64,000 nt of DNA from Ramazzottius varieornatus (lineage: Eukaryota > Animalia > Tardigrada). The translations under genes were made by a program, and so were the position numbers. The stretch covers positions 1,023,481 to 1,087,480 of the forward strand of contig BDGG01000002.1 of NCBI GenBank assembly GCA_001949185.1. Direction: 5' to 3'. Below, in pieces: positions 45,140 through 56,000 of this stretch; the stretch's first letter is position 1; each line of letters starts with the position of its first letter. A model generated the notes under the pieces. That model was given only the letters and a program-made list of their open reading frames with translations, did no database searches and was not told the DNA's origin.

Positions 45140-46120
45140 CGATCAGACATCGTCGCGTCGTGAAGTGTCCTCCTGGCTGCAGCTGGTTGGTTGATTGAAT
45201 CCCGAGTCGAAGCTGTCCTCTTCAGTCTTGAATACCACATCACTCTCATTGCCGTCTTCCCCGGATGACGACGATGCTCTGGCTGAGTATCCGCCGGAAT
45301 CGGTCGCTGTGGAAGATGCAGAAAAGCCTCGGCGCTTCTCACTTCTCGAGTTAGGCGGATAGTTTTCCTCGTCGCTTTCATGTTTCCTCAGCGCTCAAAC
45401 GTAGTCATGTTGAAGTTAATCCTTACCAGAAATGTTGGAAAAGGCCGGATCTTGGAAGCGCTTGAAAATTTTCAGATTCGAAATAACTCGAAAAATTTCG
45501 GCGCCGGTAACACCTGCCAACAGTTAGACAATCTGTTTCTCTATCGGCTCTCGCAGCTCCTTCTCCATAAACCTCAGCGTCTCGAAGATCATGTCCAGCC
45601 CTTGTTCCTGATGCAGCCAATTTGTCTCATCGAAGTGATAGTCTCGAAAGATGTCCACGTAACAGGACCCTTCGGCTTCAGCTAGAAGCAAAAGAGACCG
45701 GTGAAGCCGGTGGCGGTGAATACCGAAAAGCCAGCTCAGCCATGGAACAAGCGGAAGTGAAATGGAAGCAAAGACACAACCCAATCAACAATCAATGGGA
45801 TTCACACAGAGTTCCCGCCTTCAATCAGGCAGTTGATTGCGTCGGGCAAAGCAATACGCCACCGGAAGTCCCCTCAAAGGACGTCGAGCACAGCTTACCA
45901 TAATCAACTCCGCGGTAGACTTTGAAGGCGATGATGAGTCCGACCCACATCTCGAAAGCCAGCTCGATCTGGTCGTCGAGGAGAGATGCGGGGACGTGGT
46001 AGACGCCAAAGCATTCGTAGCGATCATCGAAGTGCAACTCCTGCTCCAGGTTGTAATTGACCATCTGAAAGAACAAGGTCGGAAGCGCTCGGTCCACTAC
46101 AGCTTTCCCATTATATCTGC
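45140..46120 (-). pseudogene. Spliced gene of unknown family with in-frame stop
   Basis: Exons YNGKAVVDRALPTLFFQMVNYN...FKVYRGVDY| and AEAEGSCYVDIFRDYHF...IEKQIV*LLAGVTG...NIS|, followed by an acidic S/D/E-rich tail. Confidence 0.4.
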
Positions 46121-46678
46121 AGAATGAACCAACGAATGGTCGAAAAGAGCGTGACTTACCGTGCCGGAAGACGAGCTTGACTGATATAGTGAATGCCTTT
46201 TGGTGAAGGTTTCTTCCAGGACGATGAGGCTTCTCAAGGTTTCACCGAAAGGAGGATGAGCTAAGCACTCAGAGGACCCGAGCTACTTCGATCGGTAAGG
46301 TCTCAAGCTGCGAAGCAGAACCGGAACGACAAGACTCTAGTTTCTACCGGATACTAAAACTGGAAAGAGGAGAAAGTCTGAAACTGAAGAAACATCAGGC
46401 AAAGTGCTTCAAGTTCAGGCCCGTATTTCAGTTGATTTTTGATTCAATCAAGACAAACAACTCGGTAACGTCATGATCGAGCCTACCCACTTTCACTTGC
46501 GCACGTCGAATAAAGCTTCGAGGAGGAACTCAGTCACAACTCACAAACACGGAGATACCGAGGTATTCTTTGCGGCTCATCTTGTGAGAAAAGCAAAAGA
46601 AAAGGCATTAATGTGCAGCAGCAATGGATAGATGCGAATAAAGACCAGCAAGTTTGCGGAAACAGAAGATCAAAAATT

Positions 46679-47799
46679 TTAGCTGGAAGACGAGGAAGAC
46701 GTGCAAGACGTGCCGCCTGCGTTCCCTGGCGCTCGCTGACCCAACAAGCTCGTAATAACGGCAAAAGAGCTCGCCACACTCTGCTGTAAGATCGCGGTAT
46801 TGTCTTGAGTCGTCAAGATCCTTTCCTGGTGGATCAAGAGGCGTTCTTGCTGCTGCAGCAGTCTTTCTTGGTTAGTGATCAGTGTCTTCAGCGTCGACAG
46901 AACCTCCACCAAACTTTCGTTCGGGGCAGCTGGTTCGACCGCTGGGGCTGACTGGTAGAGAATTTGCTGACTCTCGGACGAGTACGGTAGGCTCGCATAG
47001 CTCATCATGGAAGACGGAGCAGGGGTGCGTTGCCGTCTGTAGGTGCATCGACGAGCTGACTTATTCGGTAAACTACAGATGTCCACCACTGTAACAGCTT
47101 CCCCACCTTCCGTCTCGATATCTGGGTGAGAATCGTTACCAGTAATCAGAGAGTCTATCAGCTGGTAAATAGCGCCTGTCAGTTTGCCAGTGCGTTTCTT
47201 GGCGCGGTAACACTTGTCGAGATTCCGCCATTTCTCATGGACTTGCGCACGCGACTTGCCGAAGCTCTTTTCGAATCGTCCTCGCAGACGTTCTGTGACA
47301 GTCCTCCAGAATTCTCTAGGAGGCACTGTACCCACCAAGTGTTTCATCTCGACCAGACGTAACCTCACCAAATAACTGGAAAAAAAGAAACAAGACAGTG
47401 CGTAAGTTCCAGCATTCCCGATCACATCGCGGACTTCCGGCGAATCAACCGTAGCCTACACCATACGTCAACGACGTCATTTGCGCCAGTCTCAACAGAT
47501 CGAAGCCCACAATATCCCAGCCAGCCAGGCCGTTAATCTGCACTTGGGTTTCAGTGGCGCGCAGAGCGGCTAGACCGTGATGGAAAATTACTAGCTTACC
47601 TTGCTTGCTCCAGTGTGAACGATCCACTGTTGCGAACGATTGGAGACGACCTCCCGGATCCATTCTGCTCCTCCCCTGGATACTCTTCCTCGTGCAGCCC
47701 TTCGTGCTCTGCCGTATTATCCTCCACTTCGTCTTCGGCATCTTCGGGCTCGGAATCATCGCGGACGCGCTTCATTCCTCTTGGAAAAATTCGTGACAT
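46679..47799 (-). CDS. Myb/SANT-like (trihelix) DNA-binding protein with C-terminal coiled coil, 298 aa
   Basis: Exons 47799-47600 and 47375-46679. FTLEQASYLVRLRL...REFWRTVTERL...SRAQVHEKWRNLDKCYR matches the trihelix pattern. Acidic N-terminus and QERLLQQQERLLIHQERIL heptads. Confidence 0.8.
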
Positions 47800-48536
47800 T
47801 TTTCAACGGTCTGCAACCAGATAACGAACAGACTACCGTACCAGCTACCAGCTAGTAATTACAGGTAACTCAATCTACCAAATACCTTACCTTTCCTGAG
47901 AAACAGTCTTGAAAGACTCAAATGTCAGTGGTCGGACGCAGTGTTATTTTACTATGCAATTAAAATTACTAAAAGTCTGCAAGTAAAATCAACTATCGCT
48001 GACGGATTTGAATTATTTGAATAAATTTGATTTCTATCATGGATCAATCAATCAATCGAGCGAACACAAACCCGCACAATTAAAACGATCTTGATTATTA
48101 AAATCGATTTCCTATTATAATGATTAAAATAACACTGGTCGAACGCCAGTGAGGCGCAGGAGCAGACAGAAATCCACACTGTCTGATGAATGTTGGTCCA
48201 CAGCCATAGGTGACAATTCCACCTCGAGATGGAATCCGTATGATCATATCAACCAGCCTGGTACACCTTCTCTGTGGTGACAAACCAATGCAGCCAAACC
48301 TGGTTGGTGGGCACGTTCTGGTTCAACCAACCAGATAAACGTGAGGCTGGGCAATCACAGCCAACCACAAACCTGGTTAAACCAACGGGCAAACAAACGC
48401 AACAGCCAACAGATAACCATCACTTTTGTTGTCCGTGTAAGCTGCGGTACAGACCGGGATCTGGCCGCGTGCGCTGCACTGCGCCGCAGCTTCGCTACGT
48501 GGCAGCGCAGTTGCAGTATTCACTTTGACCTTTGTG

Positions 48537-48578
48537 TGCAGCGCAGCGCAGCGCAGCGCAGCGCAGCGCAGCGCAGCA
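48537..48578. repeat. (GCAGC)n microsatellite within a GCAGC-rich degenerate repeat region (48440-49120)
   Basis: About 8 tandem GCAGC units, with scattered GCAGCGCAG motifs in the flanks. Confidence 0.9.
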
Positions 48579-49124
48579 CAGTATGCAGCGCCTGACAAGC
48601 TACGGCAGCGCAGCTGCAAATGATACGAAAAGAGAGTTTTCGATTTTCAAACTAAGGATCTCCCGGTTAGCGGCCGTTATACAACCCTTGTTTGCTAGGT
48701 GTATTCTGCTTCTTCATAAAACAACGACCGGTCGCGCAAGCTTTCCTTGAAATAGTGCTTCGCCCAACCGTAAAGGGCTTAGTGGTTAAGCTGTCACTGT
48801 GACCGGAAGTTTCGGACTTTGACACAGTTAGTTCTGTAGGTAGCTTCAACGCACTTTGCTGTGAACTGCTTTTGTTAGCCGAATGATTAGAGCTCTATGA
48901 TGGAGGATCACGTGTTATCTGAAAATTCTCTGGAGGAAAGCGAAGGATATTTGTTATTGAAACCGCAGCGCAGTTGCCTCGCACGTACAGTAAGGTGCAG
49001 CGCAGCTGCACCGTCCCTCCGGTCCAGATTTACGCAGCGCAGCATAGTTGTTGAGTACCAGAAAAGGACGCAGTGCAGATGCAGCGTACTTTTTGACCTG
49101 CGGCCCAGGTCTCTAAGCTGCGGA

Positions 49125-49744
49125 TAGTGCTGGCTAGAATACGATAAAATTCGGTACGATATTTTTCGATACAAAATCGGCGGATATTTTATCGCGGTCT
49201 TCGATGTTCATTCGATATCGATATTTCGATACGATATTTTTCCGTTACCGTATTTTCGATATATCGTGTCGTATCGCAGCGATATATCGATATTTCTGGA
49301 ATTTTAGTTTTTCGGAATTCCACTGGTCCAAGTTCAAAAACTCAAGAAGCCGATTTCCACATAAAGTATTAGTAAGATCGAAAGCGTCGGATGCAGCAAA
49401 GACATGAATATACCAAGACTTCAAACACATGGAACCTGGACAGAATTAGTACCAAAATCGAATGGGCGGAGTGTGCTCGGTACACCATGGCCAAAATTAA
49501 GTCTTTGAAATCAACCATGGTCTTCCGTATGCGAGATATCAATGGAGAGTTTGCCATTCAGCAAAATACCGATATATCGAAAGTATATCGATATGGCGCT
49601 ATACAATATCGCCGAATAATTTATTGCGTTATTCGATACGATTTTTATACCGATCTTTCCGATACGATAGGTGCCGCATATTTTATCGCGAAGATTCGAT
49701 ATATTTCGATACGATATCGGTACACCGTATCGTCGCCAGCACTA
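49125..49744. mobile_element. Non-autonomous hAT-like element with CGATA-rich subterminal arrays
   Basis: TIR TAGTGCTGGC / GCCAGCACTA. Dense CGATA/TATCG motifs at 49140-49290 and 49570-49735. No 8-bp TSD is recognisable. Confidence 0.7.
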
Positions 49745-50034
49745 TCTTCCTTGTGAAGACTTACCAACTGAGTGTTGATGAGCACCCATGTTGCGAGAAG
49801 AAGACATTTTTGGCTGTCCTCATCACCGGTTGTTCGACCGTTCCAACGATAACCGCAGCAAATTTTTACGCTAGTGTTATCACCAAGAACTTGCCGAAAA
49901 CGAAAAACACAGAACGAGTCCGACTATAATCGACTCTTGAAAATCTCTTTTCAGAAGTATTGCACTGAACAGAATAATCAAAAAGAGAACGGTAGTAACG
50001 ACAGAATACACCAGTTGCAACTGAATGAGAAACA

Positions 50035-53000
50035 TTATCGATAGGAACCCGAATGGTATCCTCCTGCTCCGTAGTTGGCCGGCGCAGACCCATAACCTTG
50101 CCCAGCACCGTCAGTTCTGGCCCAGGCATCCGCGTTGGCCGGGTGCTGCGGATTGTAAGTGGTGTAGTTACTGTTATCGAGTAGGCTTCCCTGTCCGTAG
50201 TTCCCGCTATACGAGTCTTGGTTCGTGTAGTAGCTTTGGGAGTTATCTTGGTAGTATCCACCTTGCTCATCGCTCGTACCATAGCTTTTCCGACTGTTAT
50301 CTGAAAACAACAAGAAGGCTGAAGAAGCTCAAACAGACTGATATCATTTGACAAGCATCGTGAGGAAGTTCCATCGTGTACCCGCATACCAGAGAAAGCG
50401 CGTATTAGCATCTGACCCATGCATGCAGGTGCCCGGTGTACGCCACCTGCATACATGGACCGTATGCCAAGTTACAAGTCCTTGCATGCAGGTACATGAG
50501 GCAGGTCAGCTCTGGAGTCTGGAATGGACTCGCGTTTTACCTGTATAGCCTAGAGCAGAAGAATATCCTGCGGATGAGGGCTGATTGCCGGCGTGCCAGC
50601 CGTTGACTTGGGCTTGTTCCGTAAGTGGAGGATCGGCCCAGGGTTGTTTCTCGCCGGATGCGAAGATGCCGTAGAATATGACACCGAGAATGTGGATCAC
50701 TGCCGCAATTATGAAGACCTTCTCCCATTCTTCGGCTGTCTGGAAACAAAACCCGTAGTCACTAACGACTGCGAAAATTATAGCAGTTTCGGTGGAGTGG
50801 GAAAGCCAGCCGAAAGTCTAATCATCATTACGGTTAGAGGGGATGGTTTACCTCGTGGGTGGTTAAGCTTTCCGTGACAATGGGACACATCATACCGGAA
50901 ATGGTCCCAACGCCGTTGGACAAACCCATTAGAATACTGGCGTAACGTGGGGCAATATCCAGGTGGTTCACGTTGAAGCCTACACAGCCAAAATGGACGT
51001 TCTTCAGTTCAACGGAACGTAACAAAAACGATTTGGGACTTTCGGCAAACGATTACGAAGCCTTTCGTCATCCAAAGTGGCGCACTAATCCATTGTTAAT
51101 GGATGGAAGAGTGCACCACTGGACAAGGCGTTCTTGTCGAGTTGTACTGTTTTTACAAAGTGGCGCACCCTTGCGGTGTTGTTAGCCGAGAGCGTGCACC
51201 GTTTCGGAAAACGATCCCGAATAATTCGTTCGCCGAGCTCGTACCTGATATTGCGAAGCCACTGCAGCCAACAGCGACGATCAATGCAACGATGGCCACA
51301 GCCTCCGTTCGCGAGTATGCCACGACCAGAAGAAAGATAGCTTCCCCTCCGAAACCTGCAATCAAGTATAAAAATCCGTAAGAGCGCAGCAAAAGACTGG
51401 AGACGAAGAGAAAGCGACAGCAGTCACCTCCGCAGTTGAAGACTTTTCGGACAGTGGTGGTACTCCAGTAGCGGCTACGCAGCCAGTCTGCCAGCATTCC
51501 TCCTACCGGCACAATCATCGACATGAGGAGATGCGGCAAGGCTCCCAAAGTTCCCGACTGCAATGGGAAGAGAGTTCATTAAATACGGATCGGGGTTTGA
51601 CGTATCTTACTTGGTTAAAGCAAGCGCCTTTTTTCGTTGGAAAAAATCATGCGCCTTCGTGTCGGAACTTCAATTTTCAGAATTAATCTTTCGTTTTGCA
51701 AACTTACGACGTCGACAACGTCATTGCGAAGCGTTGTAGTACGTCAGAGTTCCTGCATTAGTTCACCCCGCAACCCAGTACTGTTTTTCGCTGATTGACA
51801 ATGCCCTGACTTTGGAAGATATCTCTGGTCCTCGGCTGGGCTCAGCATACAGGAAAATATTCCGCCTCGGGCTGAGCTCGGAGCGAAATGCGAAAACAAC
51901 TCATTTCATTACTTTGTTAGTTCTTTGCACCTTCTGTTAGCTACAGAATATCTTATGAATTATGGGCCGTTACGGAGAGGAGAAACTGCAGCCATGGCTA
52001 GGAGTGTGGGAGTCGACTGACCGGTCAGAAAACTTCCGGGACTTCATCAAGAGCTTGGGCGTCTCCGCGGAAAAACACGGCAAGCTATCCAGGACGTTTT
52101 TGACTTATCGAAGGGAGGGCGATGATTATTATGCCGAGACCTTTGTTCCGGGCATCACCTTTACCCAGTCCCTTCCGTTTCACTTCGGACAGGAAGGCAG
52201 TGGCAAACGATTTGGGACTTCCATGAAGGTAAGCCGCCCTTCTGCTCTATATCGGTGGCTGCATTGCTTGACATGCAGTCATCCACCCGCGGCAGTTTTG
52301 ACTTATTCCAAGTTTAGCAGAGAAACAGAAGCTAGCGAACGGTGAAAACACGACAAGAGCGCTTTTTCAAGCGGCGTACGCTCCCAACCAATAACACCGA
52401 AATCGCGCGCCACCTGGGAGGAGAACCAATCTCGGACGACGGTAGTTTCAAGTGGGGGACGATCTCGATCAGTAACGCTGGCATTGTGCGCCGCTTGGGA
52501 ATCACTCGTGGCAATTTTGTTTGCGAGCTCCACAATCACGAAACGCTTTTCGTTGTCGGTTGCATGTAGTACACATTCCGCGAAAAAGGACCGGAAATGC
52601 ACTGCGAGGTCGAACTGCCGGAACTGAATCAAAAGTTCAACGAATGGTGCAAAGTCGAAGACGGGGAACTCGTCAAGGTATGGTTAATCCCTAATTTGAG
52701 ACGCCAGAGTTGCCTCCTGTTTCTACATCCCTAGGTGTTCGAGGGAGACTGCGTCACTGCGAAACGGTGGTACACTCGGACCTCTGGCCTGCCATCTAGC
52801 TAAAAGTCTTTCACCGAGTGCGGATTATTTGCGGAACCTTTCGGGTCCCAAGTGAAGATACAAGATCAATCAAAATCTGAAGCTCATCGCACCAAATCTT
52901 TTAGACCGCCACCCCGTCAGGAATGGGTAATTTGGAGGCAAAAGTTATTGATGCATCAAGGTGTCTGGTTCCGACTCCTGCAGTAGTAAAGGACGTACGA

Positions 53001-56000
53001 GTCATTTGTGATTGTCGTGCGTTTTATCTCCATGTCCCTACCGTCTATTACGCACTGAGAACATCTTTCTACGTTTTACCTCAGTGATTTCATAGCCGAA
53101 GACGTGGCTAAAATATTTGGGCTGGCTAATCAGCAGCAGGTAGAAGGTCCAGCTGCGGCAGAAGTTGGCGACAATGATTGCCCAAACCGGCATGGAAGTC
53201 AGGAACTTTTTCCAGGGAGTCATGGCGAACGTCTGTAAGGAAACCCCACAGCGGTAAATGTTTCCGATAGGACTTAGTCCCTACCTAATTGTAGGAAATG
53301 TCATGAGCGGAATTTAAACAGTACCATGATAATGGCGTTCTGAGCTCCCTGTGCTTCGCCGATGCTTTCTTCAATGTAAATACGTTCGGCTTGTGGAATG
53401 GTCGGATGTGTCGAGGGCTTATCGAAGACGAAAAAGTGCCATAGAACGTACCACGTCGCTCCCATCACACCTAACCGGCAGAAGAAAACCCAAAAGTAGT
53501 CAGCATAACAATTGCCAGCTGCTGGCCAAACAAACTCGACCAGATTAGTTTACCAAGTAGCGCACCTTCCCATTAGTACTGGCTGAAATCGTGCGCCACT
53601 TGGGACACAAATTACCGTAGACGTAGAAGCTAGCTTGCCAGCCGATGTATTCCGTCAGGAAGCCAGACAGCGGGAGTCCAAGCACGGCTCCCGCGTAAGA
53701 TCCGCAAAACGCGATGGTGGCCAAACGACTGCGCTCGAGCGGAGGCGCCCAATTGCGCCAGATACCGTGACATGCAGGGTATGTCACTCCCTACAACGAA
53801 ATCACAGCTTCTTAAGTACAATGCCCTTTCCCTGTTCATCCATGAGGAACCCTCCCTCGACCTCGCTCAAAAGCTATAGTTAACAATAAATCCTCTCCCA
53901 AGTGACGCAGAATTTTAGCTAATAACACCGAAAACGTGCGCCGCTTGGGAAGACAACGAGACCGTTTTTTCTTAACAACTTAACAATACCGTTTTTTCAT
54001 GCAGCGCACGTCTTCAGCAAATGCCAGTCAGAACGTGCGCCACTTCGAATAAGTTGTTCTCTTGTCAAGTTCGAATGCGAGCTTCCATTTTCAATTCTTT
54101 TTGATTGGATATTTCCTTGTTGATTGATCATAAATTTAACGTGTTTACAGCCGCACCTCAACCAAGCCTTGAAGGACTTTGATAACCATGACCACGCCAA
54201 AGTGCATCTTGGCGGCAGCGGGAATGAACAAGTTCATCACTGACGACATCAAGATGGCCACACCAAAGACCCTGTCAAACGTTCAAAAGACAGAATGAAT
54301 AGACTGCAATTTCCACACCTTAGATCCACAGGCAGATGAAGACCTACAGAAGCAGGGTACGCAAAGTTTTAAATAATGGTGTTGTACCTGGTGGCCGGAT
54401 ATTTGGAAGCCAAGTAACCGCCGGGTATCTGAGTTATCAGATAGCCCCAGAAGAAAGAGCTCTCCACTATTCCTGTCGTCCTGGCATCCCAGTCAAACTC
54501 TGGCTCGAACTTAACACCGGTAACCTATAAAGAACGGCTTGTGGGATTATTCGGAATGTGATCTATCTTACTGAGGGAGTGCGCCACTTGGGGGAACAGT
54601 CAGACGCTCCAAGATCGATTTTCCGACCGGCGCGCGCTTGCAGGCAGAAGCAGGCATAAGCGCGCCACATCGGTGAACGATGTTGCCGAGCTTGCTTGCC
54701 GAGTACCCGAAAATTTTACTTCGAAGAAATATCATTCTAGAAATTTGTGGCGAATACAAAAAGTGACCAAGATGAATACGTACCGTTGGTATGGTCTTGT
54801 TGCTGACCATGGCGATAATGGCTACGCCCATGTTGCAGCGGATGCCGAAGAGGATGAGAAACCCCAGGCCGCTGAGAATGGCTACGGTGTAGCGCTTGGT
54901 AAGGTCGCAGGCCGGCTTGCAGAAGTTTGGACATTCTGGCTGGATCAGCAAGCGCTTCTGTTGTGCAATCTGCTCATCTGTCCAGAGGAGCGAAGGTCCC
55001 CGATATTCCAACGGCTCGTCACCTTCATATTCCGCATCTTTGAGGAGTGTCTTTTCATCCTGACCTTTCCCGAATATCCTACCCAAGGAACAGACCGTAA
55101 TCAACAACTCAGCCAGAAACCAATTATCCAGCTTAGTTTGTTCGTAAACAGTAATCAAGCCTCCTTTTTCCAAACAGAAAAATATATTTTTCTTCCTTTT
55201 GAGAACAAGTAACGATTGTTTCGCCCAATTTGTTTTTCCATGATTTCAGAAGCTGATTTGAATTATCTGATAGATAGTCCATCAAATTCGACGAGATCGT
55301 ACTCCCAAGTGGCGCACGCTCACCGACATTAACACTGGGGAACTGCGCCAACTGGAAAATCAATCAAAATCGGCAATATTGTTTTTCTAAGTTGCGCAAA
55401 TATTCGGCCATAGAATCACCAATGTGCTCCACCTGGAAAAACATGTCTGTGGTGGCCAAGCTCGTGACTACTGGAATACCTTGATAGTTTATACAGTTGC
55501 TTCTTGCTGCTCAAAAGCAGCGGCATGACTAGTGAAGACCCAGGCCGATAATGCTTGGGTTTCCGTATAATTCACTTTGGGTTGGGCGGCCAGCTGAATG
55601 AGCCGAAAGAAAAGTCGACAAAAGCAGCGAATAGATCATGTCAATTGCTTAAAGTCAAGCCATCAGGCAATGTGTGATTAATTAGATTCAAAATAGCATT
55701 TGGGTCTGGTGAAGAGAGGCCATGTAGCACTTGACAAAAGGCAGTAGTGGCGAACCCGTTGGCCGACTTGACTTTATCCCTGACTAACGTCGCTAACGCT
55801 CTCCAGCGCATTTCCCCCACTACAGTACGCTGTACGAGAAGAAGGGATAGATAAATGGGATGGAAAGCGAGGCAAAATAATATTGAATTAGCGTAAATGC
55901 ATTTCCGATCGATGCCGCCATGATCGCACTCTCACCCATAAGCCTCTAAAGATAGAAAAGTCCCCTGTCTGCTCTGACGTATGGATGGCACTCTGTAACG

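What the first reader, a model, noticed from the sequence alone, without database searches (positions are those of the whole stretch)
51558..53079. Signal-peptide-less SAHS-like desiccation-family gene hidden antisense inside a VGLUT intron
Seen in sequence: a clean 3-exon, 147-aa ORF (51962-52803, +) lies wholly within the 1522-nt VGLUT intron 51558-53079 (-). An in-frame TGA at 51956-51958 sits just upstream of the ATG, so no signal peptide can be read into this exon. Established: canonical SAHS proteins are tardigrade-specific, FABP-fold and secreted. Inference: this is an intracellular SAHS, either an intermediate between cytosolic FABPs and secreted SAHS or a re-internalised protectant. 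Its host locus raises the possibility of expression in, or exclusion from, glutamatergic neurons. It also carries three Cys (MHCEV, EWCKV, GDCVT).
Basis: partly seen in the sequence, partly recalled or inferred. Interest (0 to 1): 0.85.

Follow-up and report, generated by a model that had tools for sequence, protein, structure and literature searches.

The report
Known tardigrade gene SAHS13, no signal peptide
The three-exon gene is real, but it is already annotated as SAHS13 of the tardigrade Ramazzottius varieornatus; it is a fast-evolving member of the secreted SAHS family whose genomic sequence encodes no signal peptide, most likely through secondary loss, and neither its expression nor its cellular location could be tested here.

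Summary
A GT..AG, phase-0, three-exon ORF (51962-52228, 52570-52677, 52735-52803, +) lies inside a 1522-nt intron of a VGLUT-type gene on the minus strand. An in-frame TGA sits at 51956-58.

The gene is not hidden. The three exon peptides tile exactly the public 147-aa protein GAU91532.1 / A0A1D1UUV8, 'SAHS13 [Ramazzottius varieornatus]'. This protein appears in Yoshida 2017, Fleming 2023 and Lim 2024.

It belongs to the SAHS family by descent:
- PDB SAHS1 matches at E 8e-26 in one gapless alignment; FABP/CRABP chains reach only about 7e-5.
- The AlphaFold model (pLDDT 92.5) superposes on SAHS1 at TM 0.86/0.91.

It lacks a signal peptide. Eleven hydrophilic residues precede the W-x-G-x-W motif, where 21 relatives carry a hydrophobic leader. 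I found no compatible upstream leader exon, and the AG sites downstream of the TGA are pyrimidine-poor. The best acceptor-like site lies upstream of the TGA, so it would serve a 5'UTR intron.

The nearest relatives have leaders directly before QPWLG. The loss is therefore derived, not an FABP-to-SAHS intermediate.

SAHS13 has the longest branch in the family tree, no N-glycosylation sequon and three cysteines.

Earlier notes of this scan flag other leaderless SAHS-like models elsewhere in this genome.

The parts
51962..52228 (+). SAHS13 coding exon 1 (89 codons; start ATG, N-terminal strand, helix-turn-helix and about half of the barrel)
   Evidence: Translation equals residues 1-89 of P0001. 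It matches SAHS1 at E 2.5e-13 and FABPs at about 3e-3. Donor AAG|gtaagc.
52229..52569 (+). Intron 1 (341 nt, phase 0); same position as in the SAHS4-type paralogues
   Evidence: gtaagc...tgtag. The paralogue ORFs in L003 and L004 end at the aligned ..K|V(gt) position.
52570..52677 (+). Coding exon 2 (36 codons; holds C101 and C116)
   Evidence: Equals residues 90-125 of P0001.
52678..52734 (+). Intron 2 (57 nt, phase 0)
   Evidence: gtatgg...ccctag; acceptor tract 82% pyrimidine.
52735..52803 (+). Coding exon 3 (22 codons plus TAA; C131 and the family's AKRWY C-terminal strand)
   Evidence: Equals residues 126-147 of P0001. AKRW[YF] is shared across relatives.
51956..51958 (+). In-frame TGA two codons upstream of the ATG
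51938..51940 (+). Second in-frame stop (TAG), which is also the AG of the best acceptor-like site
   Evidence: End of ORF 51812-51940 in the SAHS frame. The tract before 51941 is 82% pyrimidine.
51921..51946 (+). Pyrimidine tract with two AG sites (exon would start at 51941 or 51947): probable end of a 5'UTR intron, inferred
   Evidence: Pyrimidine fractions are 0.82 and 0.65, within the 0.59-0.82 range of seven real acceptors. AG sites after the TGA score 0.18-0.47.
51558..53079 (-). Host intron of the VGLUT-type (SLC17) gene; it contains the whole SAHS13 coding region
   Evidence: Donor gtaaaa and acceptor ttgcag on the minus strand. The flanking exons adjoin in VGLUT2 numbering.
53080..53223 (-). 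VGLUT exon upstream of the host intron
   Evidence: VGLUT2 residues 264-309, E 4.7e-22; sialin 3.4e-8.
51156..51557 (-). VGLUT exon downstream of the host intron
   Evidence: VGLUT2 from residue 312, E 1.5e-20.

Best explanation
This is RvSAHS13, the only SAHS-family gene of Ramazzottius varieornatus outside the Scaffold001 cluster. It is nested antisense in an intron of a VGLUT-type transporter gene. It encodes a complete FABP-fold beta-barrel, co-linear with SAHS1. Its N-terminus is eleven hydrophilic residues instead of the signal peptide plus linker that its relatives carry.

The most likely history is secondary loss. The ancestral gene had a short leader exon, a phase-1 intron, and a second exon that completed the leader, as SAHS1 and SAHS4 still have. 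In SAHS13 the stretch between the old acceptor region and QPWLG has acquired in-frame stops, and translation now starts at a new ATG.

If the gene is expressed, the product should stay in the cytosol/nucleus as a small soluble barrel. Its cavity keeps the R-x-Y clamp position (R136, Y138).

Shown here: identity, homology, predicted fold, absence of an encoded leader, and derived position in the tree. Inferred: cytosolic location, the 5'UTR intron, and any protective or ligand-carrying role.
For: - Identity. The exon peptides tile P0001, which is GAU91532.1 'SAHS13'. The genome is 55.8 Mb in 200 contigs. Lim 2024 places SAHS13 alone on Scaffold002.
- Homology. SAHS1 matches at E 8.1e-26 in one gapless alignment of 133 residues, SAHS4 at 4.5e-17 and CRABP2 at 7e-5. 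The 30 HMMER hits among 1.84 billion representatives are all SAHS-sized or larger proteins. All those with a source name are tardigrade SAHS-type proteins.
- Fold. pLDDT 92.5, ten strands plus a helix-turn-helix. Foldseek ranks SAHS1 first (TM 0.86/0.91, rmsd 1.2 A), then SAHS4, then FABPs.
- No leader. The best 8-residue hydropathy before the W-x-G-x-W motif is -1.71. In 21 leader-bearing relatives it is 2.23-3.74.
- Paralogue gene structure. A 34-nt coding leader exon, a phase-1 intron, then the rest of the leader.
- No hidden leader exon. I scanned every ATG..GT segment in 46000-51961 against every AG after the TGA and found no convincing candidate. Those AGs have pyrimidine fractions of 0.18-0.47, against 0.59-0.82 at real acceptors. 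The good acceptor-like site lies upstream of the TGA.
- Derived state. SAHS13 groups, weakly (89/60), with Hypsibius/Acutuncus proteins whose leaders abut (A/S)QPWLG. This agrees with Yoshida 2017 and Fleming 2023.
- Consistent with life outside the secretory path. It has no N-X-S/T sequon and three Cys. Of 21 leader-bearing relatives, 19 have at least one sequon, and all have 0-1 Cys.
- Maintained. An ENA orthologue is 72% identical over exon 1 with an open frame, and its contiguous upstream frame is also not leader-like (hydropathy 1.91).
Against:
- Precedent for error. The short models of RvSAHS9, 10 and 12 in the same annotation were judged to be missing N-terminal exons, with pyrimidine-poor acceptors (Lim 2024).
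- The ENA orthologue has Asp where SAHS13 has its start Met, so its start codon lies elsewhere.
- The terminal branch is the longest in the tree (1.64, median 0.73). That fits relaxed constraint as well as a new role.
- Secreted RvSAHS4 and RvSAHS6 also lack sequons, so that argument is weak.
The hydropathy measure is a crude proxy.
Confidence: 0.62

Rival explanations
1. Annotation artefact. The real mRNA carries an upstream exon that encodes a start codon and signal peptide and splices into a weak AG just after the TGA (for example ctgcag|CCATGG at 51991|51992). SAHS13 would then be an ordinary secreted SAHS.
For: All close relatives have leaders. RvSAHS9, 10 and 12 were shown to be truncated models with pyrimidine-poor acceptors. 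The orthologue P0002 has no Met at the SAHS13 start position. The CAG|CCA site would be phase 0 and would leave QPWLG-type mature ends like those of P0005, P0007 and P0031.
Against: No leader-like exon compatible with any AG after the TGA exists in the 6 kb upstream. The only mildly hydrophobic candidate, at 48240, lies beyond the 3' end of the VGLUT gene. It fits only with poor donors or with a join that deletes the conserved PWLG. The tract before 51992 is 18% pyrimidine, below every verified acceptor. The gene's sequence shows no trace of a secretory life: no sequon and three Cys.
Confidence: 0.2
2. Decaying relic. After it lost its leader the gene is barely expressed or not expressed, and it drifts under relaxed constraint. 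The intact frame would be residual.
For: It has the longest terminal branch in the family. Several SAHS1 core positions listed by Lim 2024 have changed (W32, Y64, W75 and Y141 equivalents). There is no TATA-like element or notable repeat in the 404 nt upstream. There is no expression evidence.
Against: All three exons are open with canonical splice sites. The fold is predicted with very high confidence. An orthologue 72% identical keeps exon 1 open, and most replacements are conservative. The family's N- and C-terminal motifs, PWLGxWES and AKRWY, are intact.
Confidence: 0.15
3. Evolutionary intermediate. SAHS13 would be a surviving cytosolic stage between FABPs and secreted SAHS proteins.
For: It has no signal peptide, like FABPs. 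It keeps the FABP fold and the R-x-Y position.
Against: It is about 21 orders of magnitude closer to SAHS1 than to any FABP or CRABP. Pfam's FABP/lipocalin model does not match it even at E 10. It nests within SAHS, beside leader-bearing proteins, in my tree and in two published trees.
Confidence: 0.03

Closest known systems
RvSAHS1 (PDB 5XN9/5XNA) and RvSAHS4 (5Z4G), secretory abundant heat-soluble proteins of R. varieornatus
   Same: Homologous over the whole barrel: E 8.1e-26 (gapless, 38% identity in the structural alignment) and E 4.5e-17. Same predicted fold (TM 0.86/0.91). Same C-terminal AKRWY strand. The intron after the ..K codon is shared with the SAHS4-type genes.
   Different: SAHS13 has no leader exon and no signal peptide. 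It lacks the EWTGK linker motif (W32 equivalent). It has no N-glycosylation sequon, three Cys and a very long branch. It lies on another scaffold, nested in a VGLUT intron.
Hypsibius exemplaris SAHS expansion (e.g. BV898_01322, BV898_16256/16257) and Acutuncus SAHS
   Same: These are the nearest clade in my tree and in Yoshida 2017 and Fleming 2023. They share (A/S)QPWLGxW directly at the mature N-terminus and the I/Y-T/R-R-E/D-G motif.
   Different: They carry classical leaders (hydropathy 3.3-3.6) immediately before QPWLG, and mostly have sequons. Identity to SAHS13 is only 33-35%.
Cytosolic FABP/CRABP (iLBP) family
   Same: Ten-stranded barrel with a helix-turn-helix lid, no signal peptide, about 15 kDa, and R-x-Y near the C-terminus.
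   Different: Sequence similarity is marginal (E about 1e-4). There is no Pfam PF00061 match. By descent SAHS13 is a SAHS, so any resemblance in location would be a reversion.
Truncated UniProt models of RvSAHS9, 10 and 12 (Lim et al. 2024, PMC11127935)
   Same: SAHS entries of the same annotation that lack a predicted signal peptide.
   Different: Those models lack about 40 residues of the mature domain, and an in-frame upstream exon restores them. SAHS13 has the complete domain, two in-frame stops upstream and no restoring exon.
Nematode secreted FABPs (nemFABP, As-p18; PMC6646235)
   Same: Another case in which a member of the FABP superfamily changed compartment (abstract seen).
   Different: The direction is opposite (cytosolic to secreted). 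They are unrelated beyond the superfamily. Not analysed here.

Membership tests
SAHS (secretory abundant heat-soluble) family | Sequence homology to SAHS1/SAHS2-type proteins, clearly stronger than to FABPs | tested here: met
   SAHS1 8.1e-26 and SAHS4 4.5e-17, against 7e-5 for the best FABP/CRABP. Only SAHS-type hits came from 1.84 billion representatives.
SAHS (secretory abundant heat-soluble) family | FABP-like beta-barrel with helix-turn-helix | tested here: met
   AlphaFold2 pLDDT 92.5. Foldseek top hits are 5XN9 and 5Z4G. This is a prediction, not an experiment.
SAHS (secretory abundant heat-soluble) family | N-terminal signal peptide / secretion | tested here: not met
   Eleven hydrophilic residues precede the motif (hydropathy -1.71, against 2.23-3.74 in relatives). 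Stops lie upstream, and no compatible leader exon exists. This was tested on the genome only; no transcript was seen.
SAHS (secretory abundant heat-soluble) family | Abundant expression and heat solubility | not testable with these tools
The supplement of Hashimoto 2016 is not held.
SAHS (secretory abundant heat-soluble) family | Family gene structure (four exons in SAHS1/2; leader split by a phase-1 intron) | tested here: inconclusive
   The intron after ..K is shared with SAHS4-type genes. The leader exon and intron are absent from the coding region, but an acceptor-like site persists at 51940.
Cytosolic FABP / iLBP family (Pfam PF00061) | Match to the family profile | tested here: not met
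   No Pfam family matches P0001 at E up to 10.
Cytosolic FABP / iLBP family (Pfam PF00061) | Carboxylate clamp R-x-Y in the last strand | tested here: inconclusive
   R136-W137-Y138 falls at CRABP2 positions 132-134, judging from the end coordinates of the alignment. This was inferred from coordinates and not inspected residue by residue.
VGLUT / SLC17 (host gene) | Flanking exons homologous to adjoining VGLUT segments | tested here: met
   VGLUT2 residues 264-309 (4.7e-22) and from residue 312 (1.5e-20). Sialin is much weaker.

The most novel reading that the evidence does not exclude
SAHS13 would be a genuinely cytosolic descendant of a secreted SAHS. It would be maintained in the Ramazzottius lineage, given the 72%-identical orthologue. 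It may be paralleled by leaderless, sequon-free SAHS models of Hypsibius exemplaris (BV898_00494, WPK49617). The SAHS barrel would then have been redeployed inside cells at least once, shedding glycosylation sites and gaining cysteines.
Probability: 0.35. Interest if true: 0.5.

Novelty: already known. Interest (0 to 1): 0.3.

Why it matters
SAHS proteins are studied as extracellular desiccation protectants. A family member that stays inside cells would bear on whether the barrel itself, rather than its compartment, carries the protective activity. It would also add a reverse example to the known cases of FABP-fold proteins changing compartment.

In practice, SAHS13 is the one leaderless R. 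varieornatus SAHS model that an obvious missing exon does not explain. Lim et al. 2024 left it out of their TargetP analysis, so it is the best candidate for a simple localisation and expression test. The nesting in a VGLUT intron is an ordinary nested-gene arrangement with no demonstrated consequence.

Tried and rejected
That ruled out dN/dS and any check of synteny or nesting in other tardigrades.
- Metagenome scan with the SAHS13/orthologue alignment. It gave 168 pattern matches, none confirmed.
- Pfam on the exon peptides and on P0001: nothing.
- PF00061 in the window's own genome, sought as an FABP outgroup: no match in six-frame exons. My tree is therefore unrooted, drawn at the midpoint.
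- Word-index protein search. It found only SAHS13 itself and one ENA cluster.
- Accession search in papers: blank. The supplements of Hashimoto 2016 are not held. The supplements of Yoshida 2017 and Lim 2024 do not name SAHS13.
- Homology between the orthologue's upstream ORF and the R. varieornatus upstream DNA, in three frames. Nothing beyond G..G....QPWLG.
- The hydrophobic mini-ORF at 48240. It resembles a SAHS leader exon in form, but I rejected it. It lies beyond the VGLUT 3' end. It also fits only joins that delete PWLG or that use poor donors.
- Repeats in the 404 nt upstream: nothing notable.
- Joined model. Whole-length searches used the public protein P0001 returned. Hypothetical exon joins were only frame-checked inside one script.
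Full report
**What is there.**
The + strand of 51962-52803 holds three open exons: 51962-52228, 52570-52677 and 52735-52803. They are joined by GT..AG introns of 341 and 57 nt, all in phase 0. An in-frame TGA lies at 51956-58, and a second in-frame stop (TAG) at 51938-40.

The three exon translations sit at offsets 0, 89 and 125 of a 147-aa public protein, P0001. P0001 came back from a search with exon 1 given by reference. It is GAU91532.1 / UniProt A0A1D1UUV8, named 'SAHS13 [Ramazzottius varieornatus]'. The window's genome has 55.8 Mb in 200 contigs.

I sent no joined model of my own to any search tool. Whole-length searches used the public record P0001. Hypothetical joins were only frame-checked inside one script.

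**Host gene.**
On the minus strand, exon 53080-53223 matches VGLUT2 residues 264-309 (E 4.7e-22; sialin only 3.4e-8). Exon 51156-51557 matches VGLUT2 from residue 312 (E 1.5e-20). The intron between them, 51558-53079, has donor gtaaaa and acceptor ttgcag.

Further VGLUT-like exons run down to about 49900 and up to about 55170. Nested antisense genes are common in animal genomes (established knowledge). Nothing here links the two genes functionally.

**Already known.**
- Yoshida et al. 2017 (PMC5531438) state that most H. dujardini SAHS loci form a species-specific expansion orthologous to the single locus RvSAHS13.
- Fleming et al. 2023 (PMC10799326), using FABP outgroups, recover a clade of RvSAHS13, Hypsibius SAHS10 and Acutuncus SAHS2/3 inside a monophyletic SAHS.
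- Lim et al. 2024 (PMC11127935) place SAHS13 alone on Scaffold002 and note that it has no N-glycosylation site.

The gene is therefore not hidden. What the searchable literature does not discuss is its missing leader. Lim et al. ran TargetP on SAHS1-4 and 6-12 only. Searches for SAHS13 and for its accessions found nothing further.

**Family.**
- Exon 1 alone matches SAHS1 at E 2.5e-13 and SAHS4 at 2e-9. FABPs reach about 3e-3.
- The whole protein matches SAHS1 at 8.1e-26 in one gapless alignment (residues 10-142 against 6-138). It matches SAHS4 at 4.5e-17 and CRABP2 at 7e-5.
- Pfam gives nothing, as reported for SAHS proteins by Yamaguchi 2012.
- HMMER over 1.84 billion representatives gives 30 hits at E up to 1e-3. 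Those with source names are SAHS-type proteins of Paramacrobiotus, Hypsibius and Acutuncus.
- The AlphaFold2 model has pLDDT 92.5, ten strands and a helix-turn-helix. Only the first ten residues are of low confidence.
- Foldseek ranks 5XN9 first (TM 0.86/0.91, rmsd 1.2 A), then 5Z4G, then FABPs.

**The N-terminus.**
Every HMMER hit aligns from SAHS13 residue 8-13, except two fragments. The matching position in the hit is residue 16-58 for most, and earlier only in a model that itself lacks a leader. The relatives therefore carry an N-terminal extension that SAHS13 lacks.

I measured the best 8-residue Kyte-Doolittle mean before the W-x-G-x-W motif:
- SAHS13: -1.71.
- The 21 leader-bearing relatives: 2.23-3.74.
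- The ENA orthologue's contiguous upstream frame: 1.91.

In the paralogues SAHS1, L003 and SAHS4, the leader is split. A 34-nt coding first exon (M-S-x-A-...-G) is followed by a phase-1 intron of about 85-190 nt. The second exon then completes the leader and encodes a linker.

For SAHS13, a coding upstream exon would have to splice into an AG between the TGA and the W12 codon. I combined every ATG..GT segment of 46000-51961 with every such AG. None gave a convincing leader.

The most hydrophobic candidate, at 48240, lies beyond the 3' end of the VGLUT gene. It is compatible only with joins that delete PWLG, or with poor donors.

The AG sites after the TGA have 18-47% pyrimidines at -20..-4. 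Seven real acceptors (SAHS13 introns, VGLUT, paralogues) have 59-82%. The best acceptor-like site, ttctgttag|C with the exon starting at 51941 (82%), lies upstream of the TGA. It would therefore end a 5'UTR intron; this is inference.

An out-of-frame ATG at 51955 opens a 21-codon ORF that overlaps the start.

**Direction of change.**
In a maximum-likelihood tree of 25 SAHS-type proteins, SAHS13 is weakly (89/60) sister to a Hypsibius/Acutuncus/metatranscriptome group. In that group the leader directly abuts (A/S)QPWLG. SAHS13 also has the longest terminal branch, 1.64 against a median of 0.73.

The tree is unrooted because I could obtain no FABP outgroup. The published rooted tree agrees that SAHS13 is nested. 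A missing leader is therefore a derived state, and the 'FABP-to-SAHS intermediate' reading is not supported.

**Indirect signs.**
- SAHS13 has no N-X-S/T sequon and three cysteines (C101, C116, C131). These occupy positions that are V, Y and D in SAHS1.
- Of the 21 leader-bearing relatives, 19 have at least one sequon, and all have 0-1 Cys in the domain.
- Two other leaderless models, both from H. exemplaris (BV898_00494 and WPK49617), also have no sequon.
- This fits a non-secretory life, but it is weak evidence. Secreted RvSAHS4 and RvSAHS6 also lack sequons, and the H. exemplaris models may themselves be truncated.

I mapped the SAHS1 core residues listed by Lim 2024 through the gapless alignment (SAHS13 residue i corresponds to SAHS1 residue i+25):
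- Kept, or changed conservatively: W37, M38, W41, Y81, F98, L100, L124, V143, L148 and A159.
- Changed: W32, Y64, I74, W75 and Y141.

**Orthologue.**
Two ENA proteins, P0002 and P0003, are prokaryote-style ORF calls on short genomic contigs. They are 72% identical to exon 1 and read on into the intron after ..GTSMK, just as the window's ORF does.

They keep G..G....QPWLG but have Asp where SAHS13 has Met1, and their frame stays open for 41 codons upstream. That upstream part is not leader-like. It shows no homology to the R. varieornatus upstream DNA in any frame. It differs between the two ENA proteins at 3 of 43 positions, against 1 of 85 in the rest of the protein. These numbers are too small for a conclusion.

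The lineage is thus maintained beyond one species, but where the orthologue's translation starts remains open.

**Limits.**
- The precedent of RvSAHS9, 10 and 12, short models that upstream exons with weak acceptors repair, keeps a mis-annotated 5' end as a real rival.

**Verdict.**
The SAHS assignment is right. The missing leader is supported at genome level, at about 0.6-0.65. It is best read as secondary loss in a fast-evolving paralogue. Function and expression are unknown.

Noticed in passing
Proteins P0026 (H. exemplaris BV898_00494) and P0033/P0022 (H. exemplaris SAHS WPK49617/WPK49613): Two further SAHS-type models lack a hydrophobic leader. Both have zero N-X-S/T sequons, and they group together weakly (91/48) in the tree. 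They are either truncated models or other leaderless SAHS proteins.
   Followed up: partly
window 51955-52020 (+): An out-of-frame ATG seven bases upstream of the SAHS13 start opens a 21-codon ORF that overlaps the start codon. If it lies in the mRNA it could act as an upstream ORF.
   Followed up: no
window 48240-48276 (+): A mini-ORF (M-I-I-S-T-S-L-V-H-L-L-C-G, then GT, phase 1) has the form of the 34-nt leader exons of SAHS1 and SAHS4. It lies 3.7 kb upstream of SAHS13, beyond the VGLUT 3' end. I judged it to be chance.
   Followed up: partly
window 46679-47425 (-): A 248-aa open frame just downstream of the VGLUT gene's 3' end. It has a basic, helix-rich N-terminal part and a Ser-rich tail. 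Not searched.
   Followed up: no
window about 48535-48600: A short tandem repeat that reads A-A-Q-R-S several times in one frame and its complement in the other strand's ORF.
   Followed up: no
L002 (G000:C1:6739774-6742965), L003, L004: The SAHS cluster paralogues on contig C1 share a conserved 34-nt coding first exon and a phase-1 intron inside the signal peptide. L003 holds a second W-L-G-K-W-E-S exon about 1.2 kb away, so the genes are tightly tandem.
   Followed up: partly
Proteins P0012 and P0031 (JGI contigs of 943 and 912 nt): Complete, intron-free SAHS-type ORFs with leaders sit on short metagenome-collection contigs. They are probably tardigrade transcripts in environmental metatranscriptomes.
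   Followed up: no
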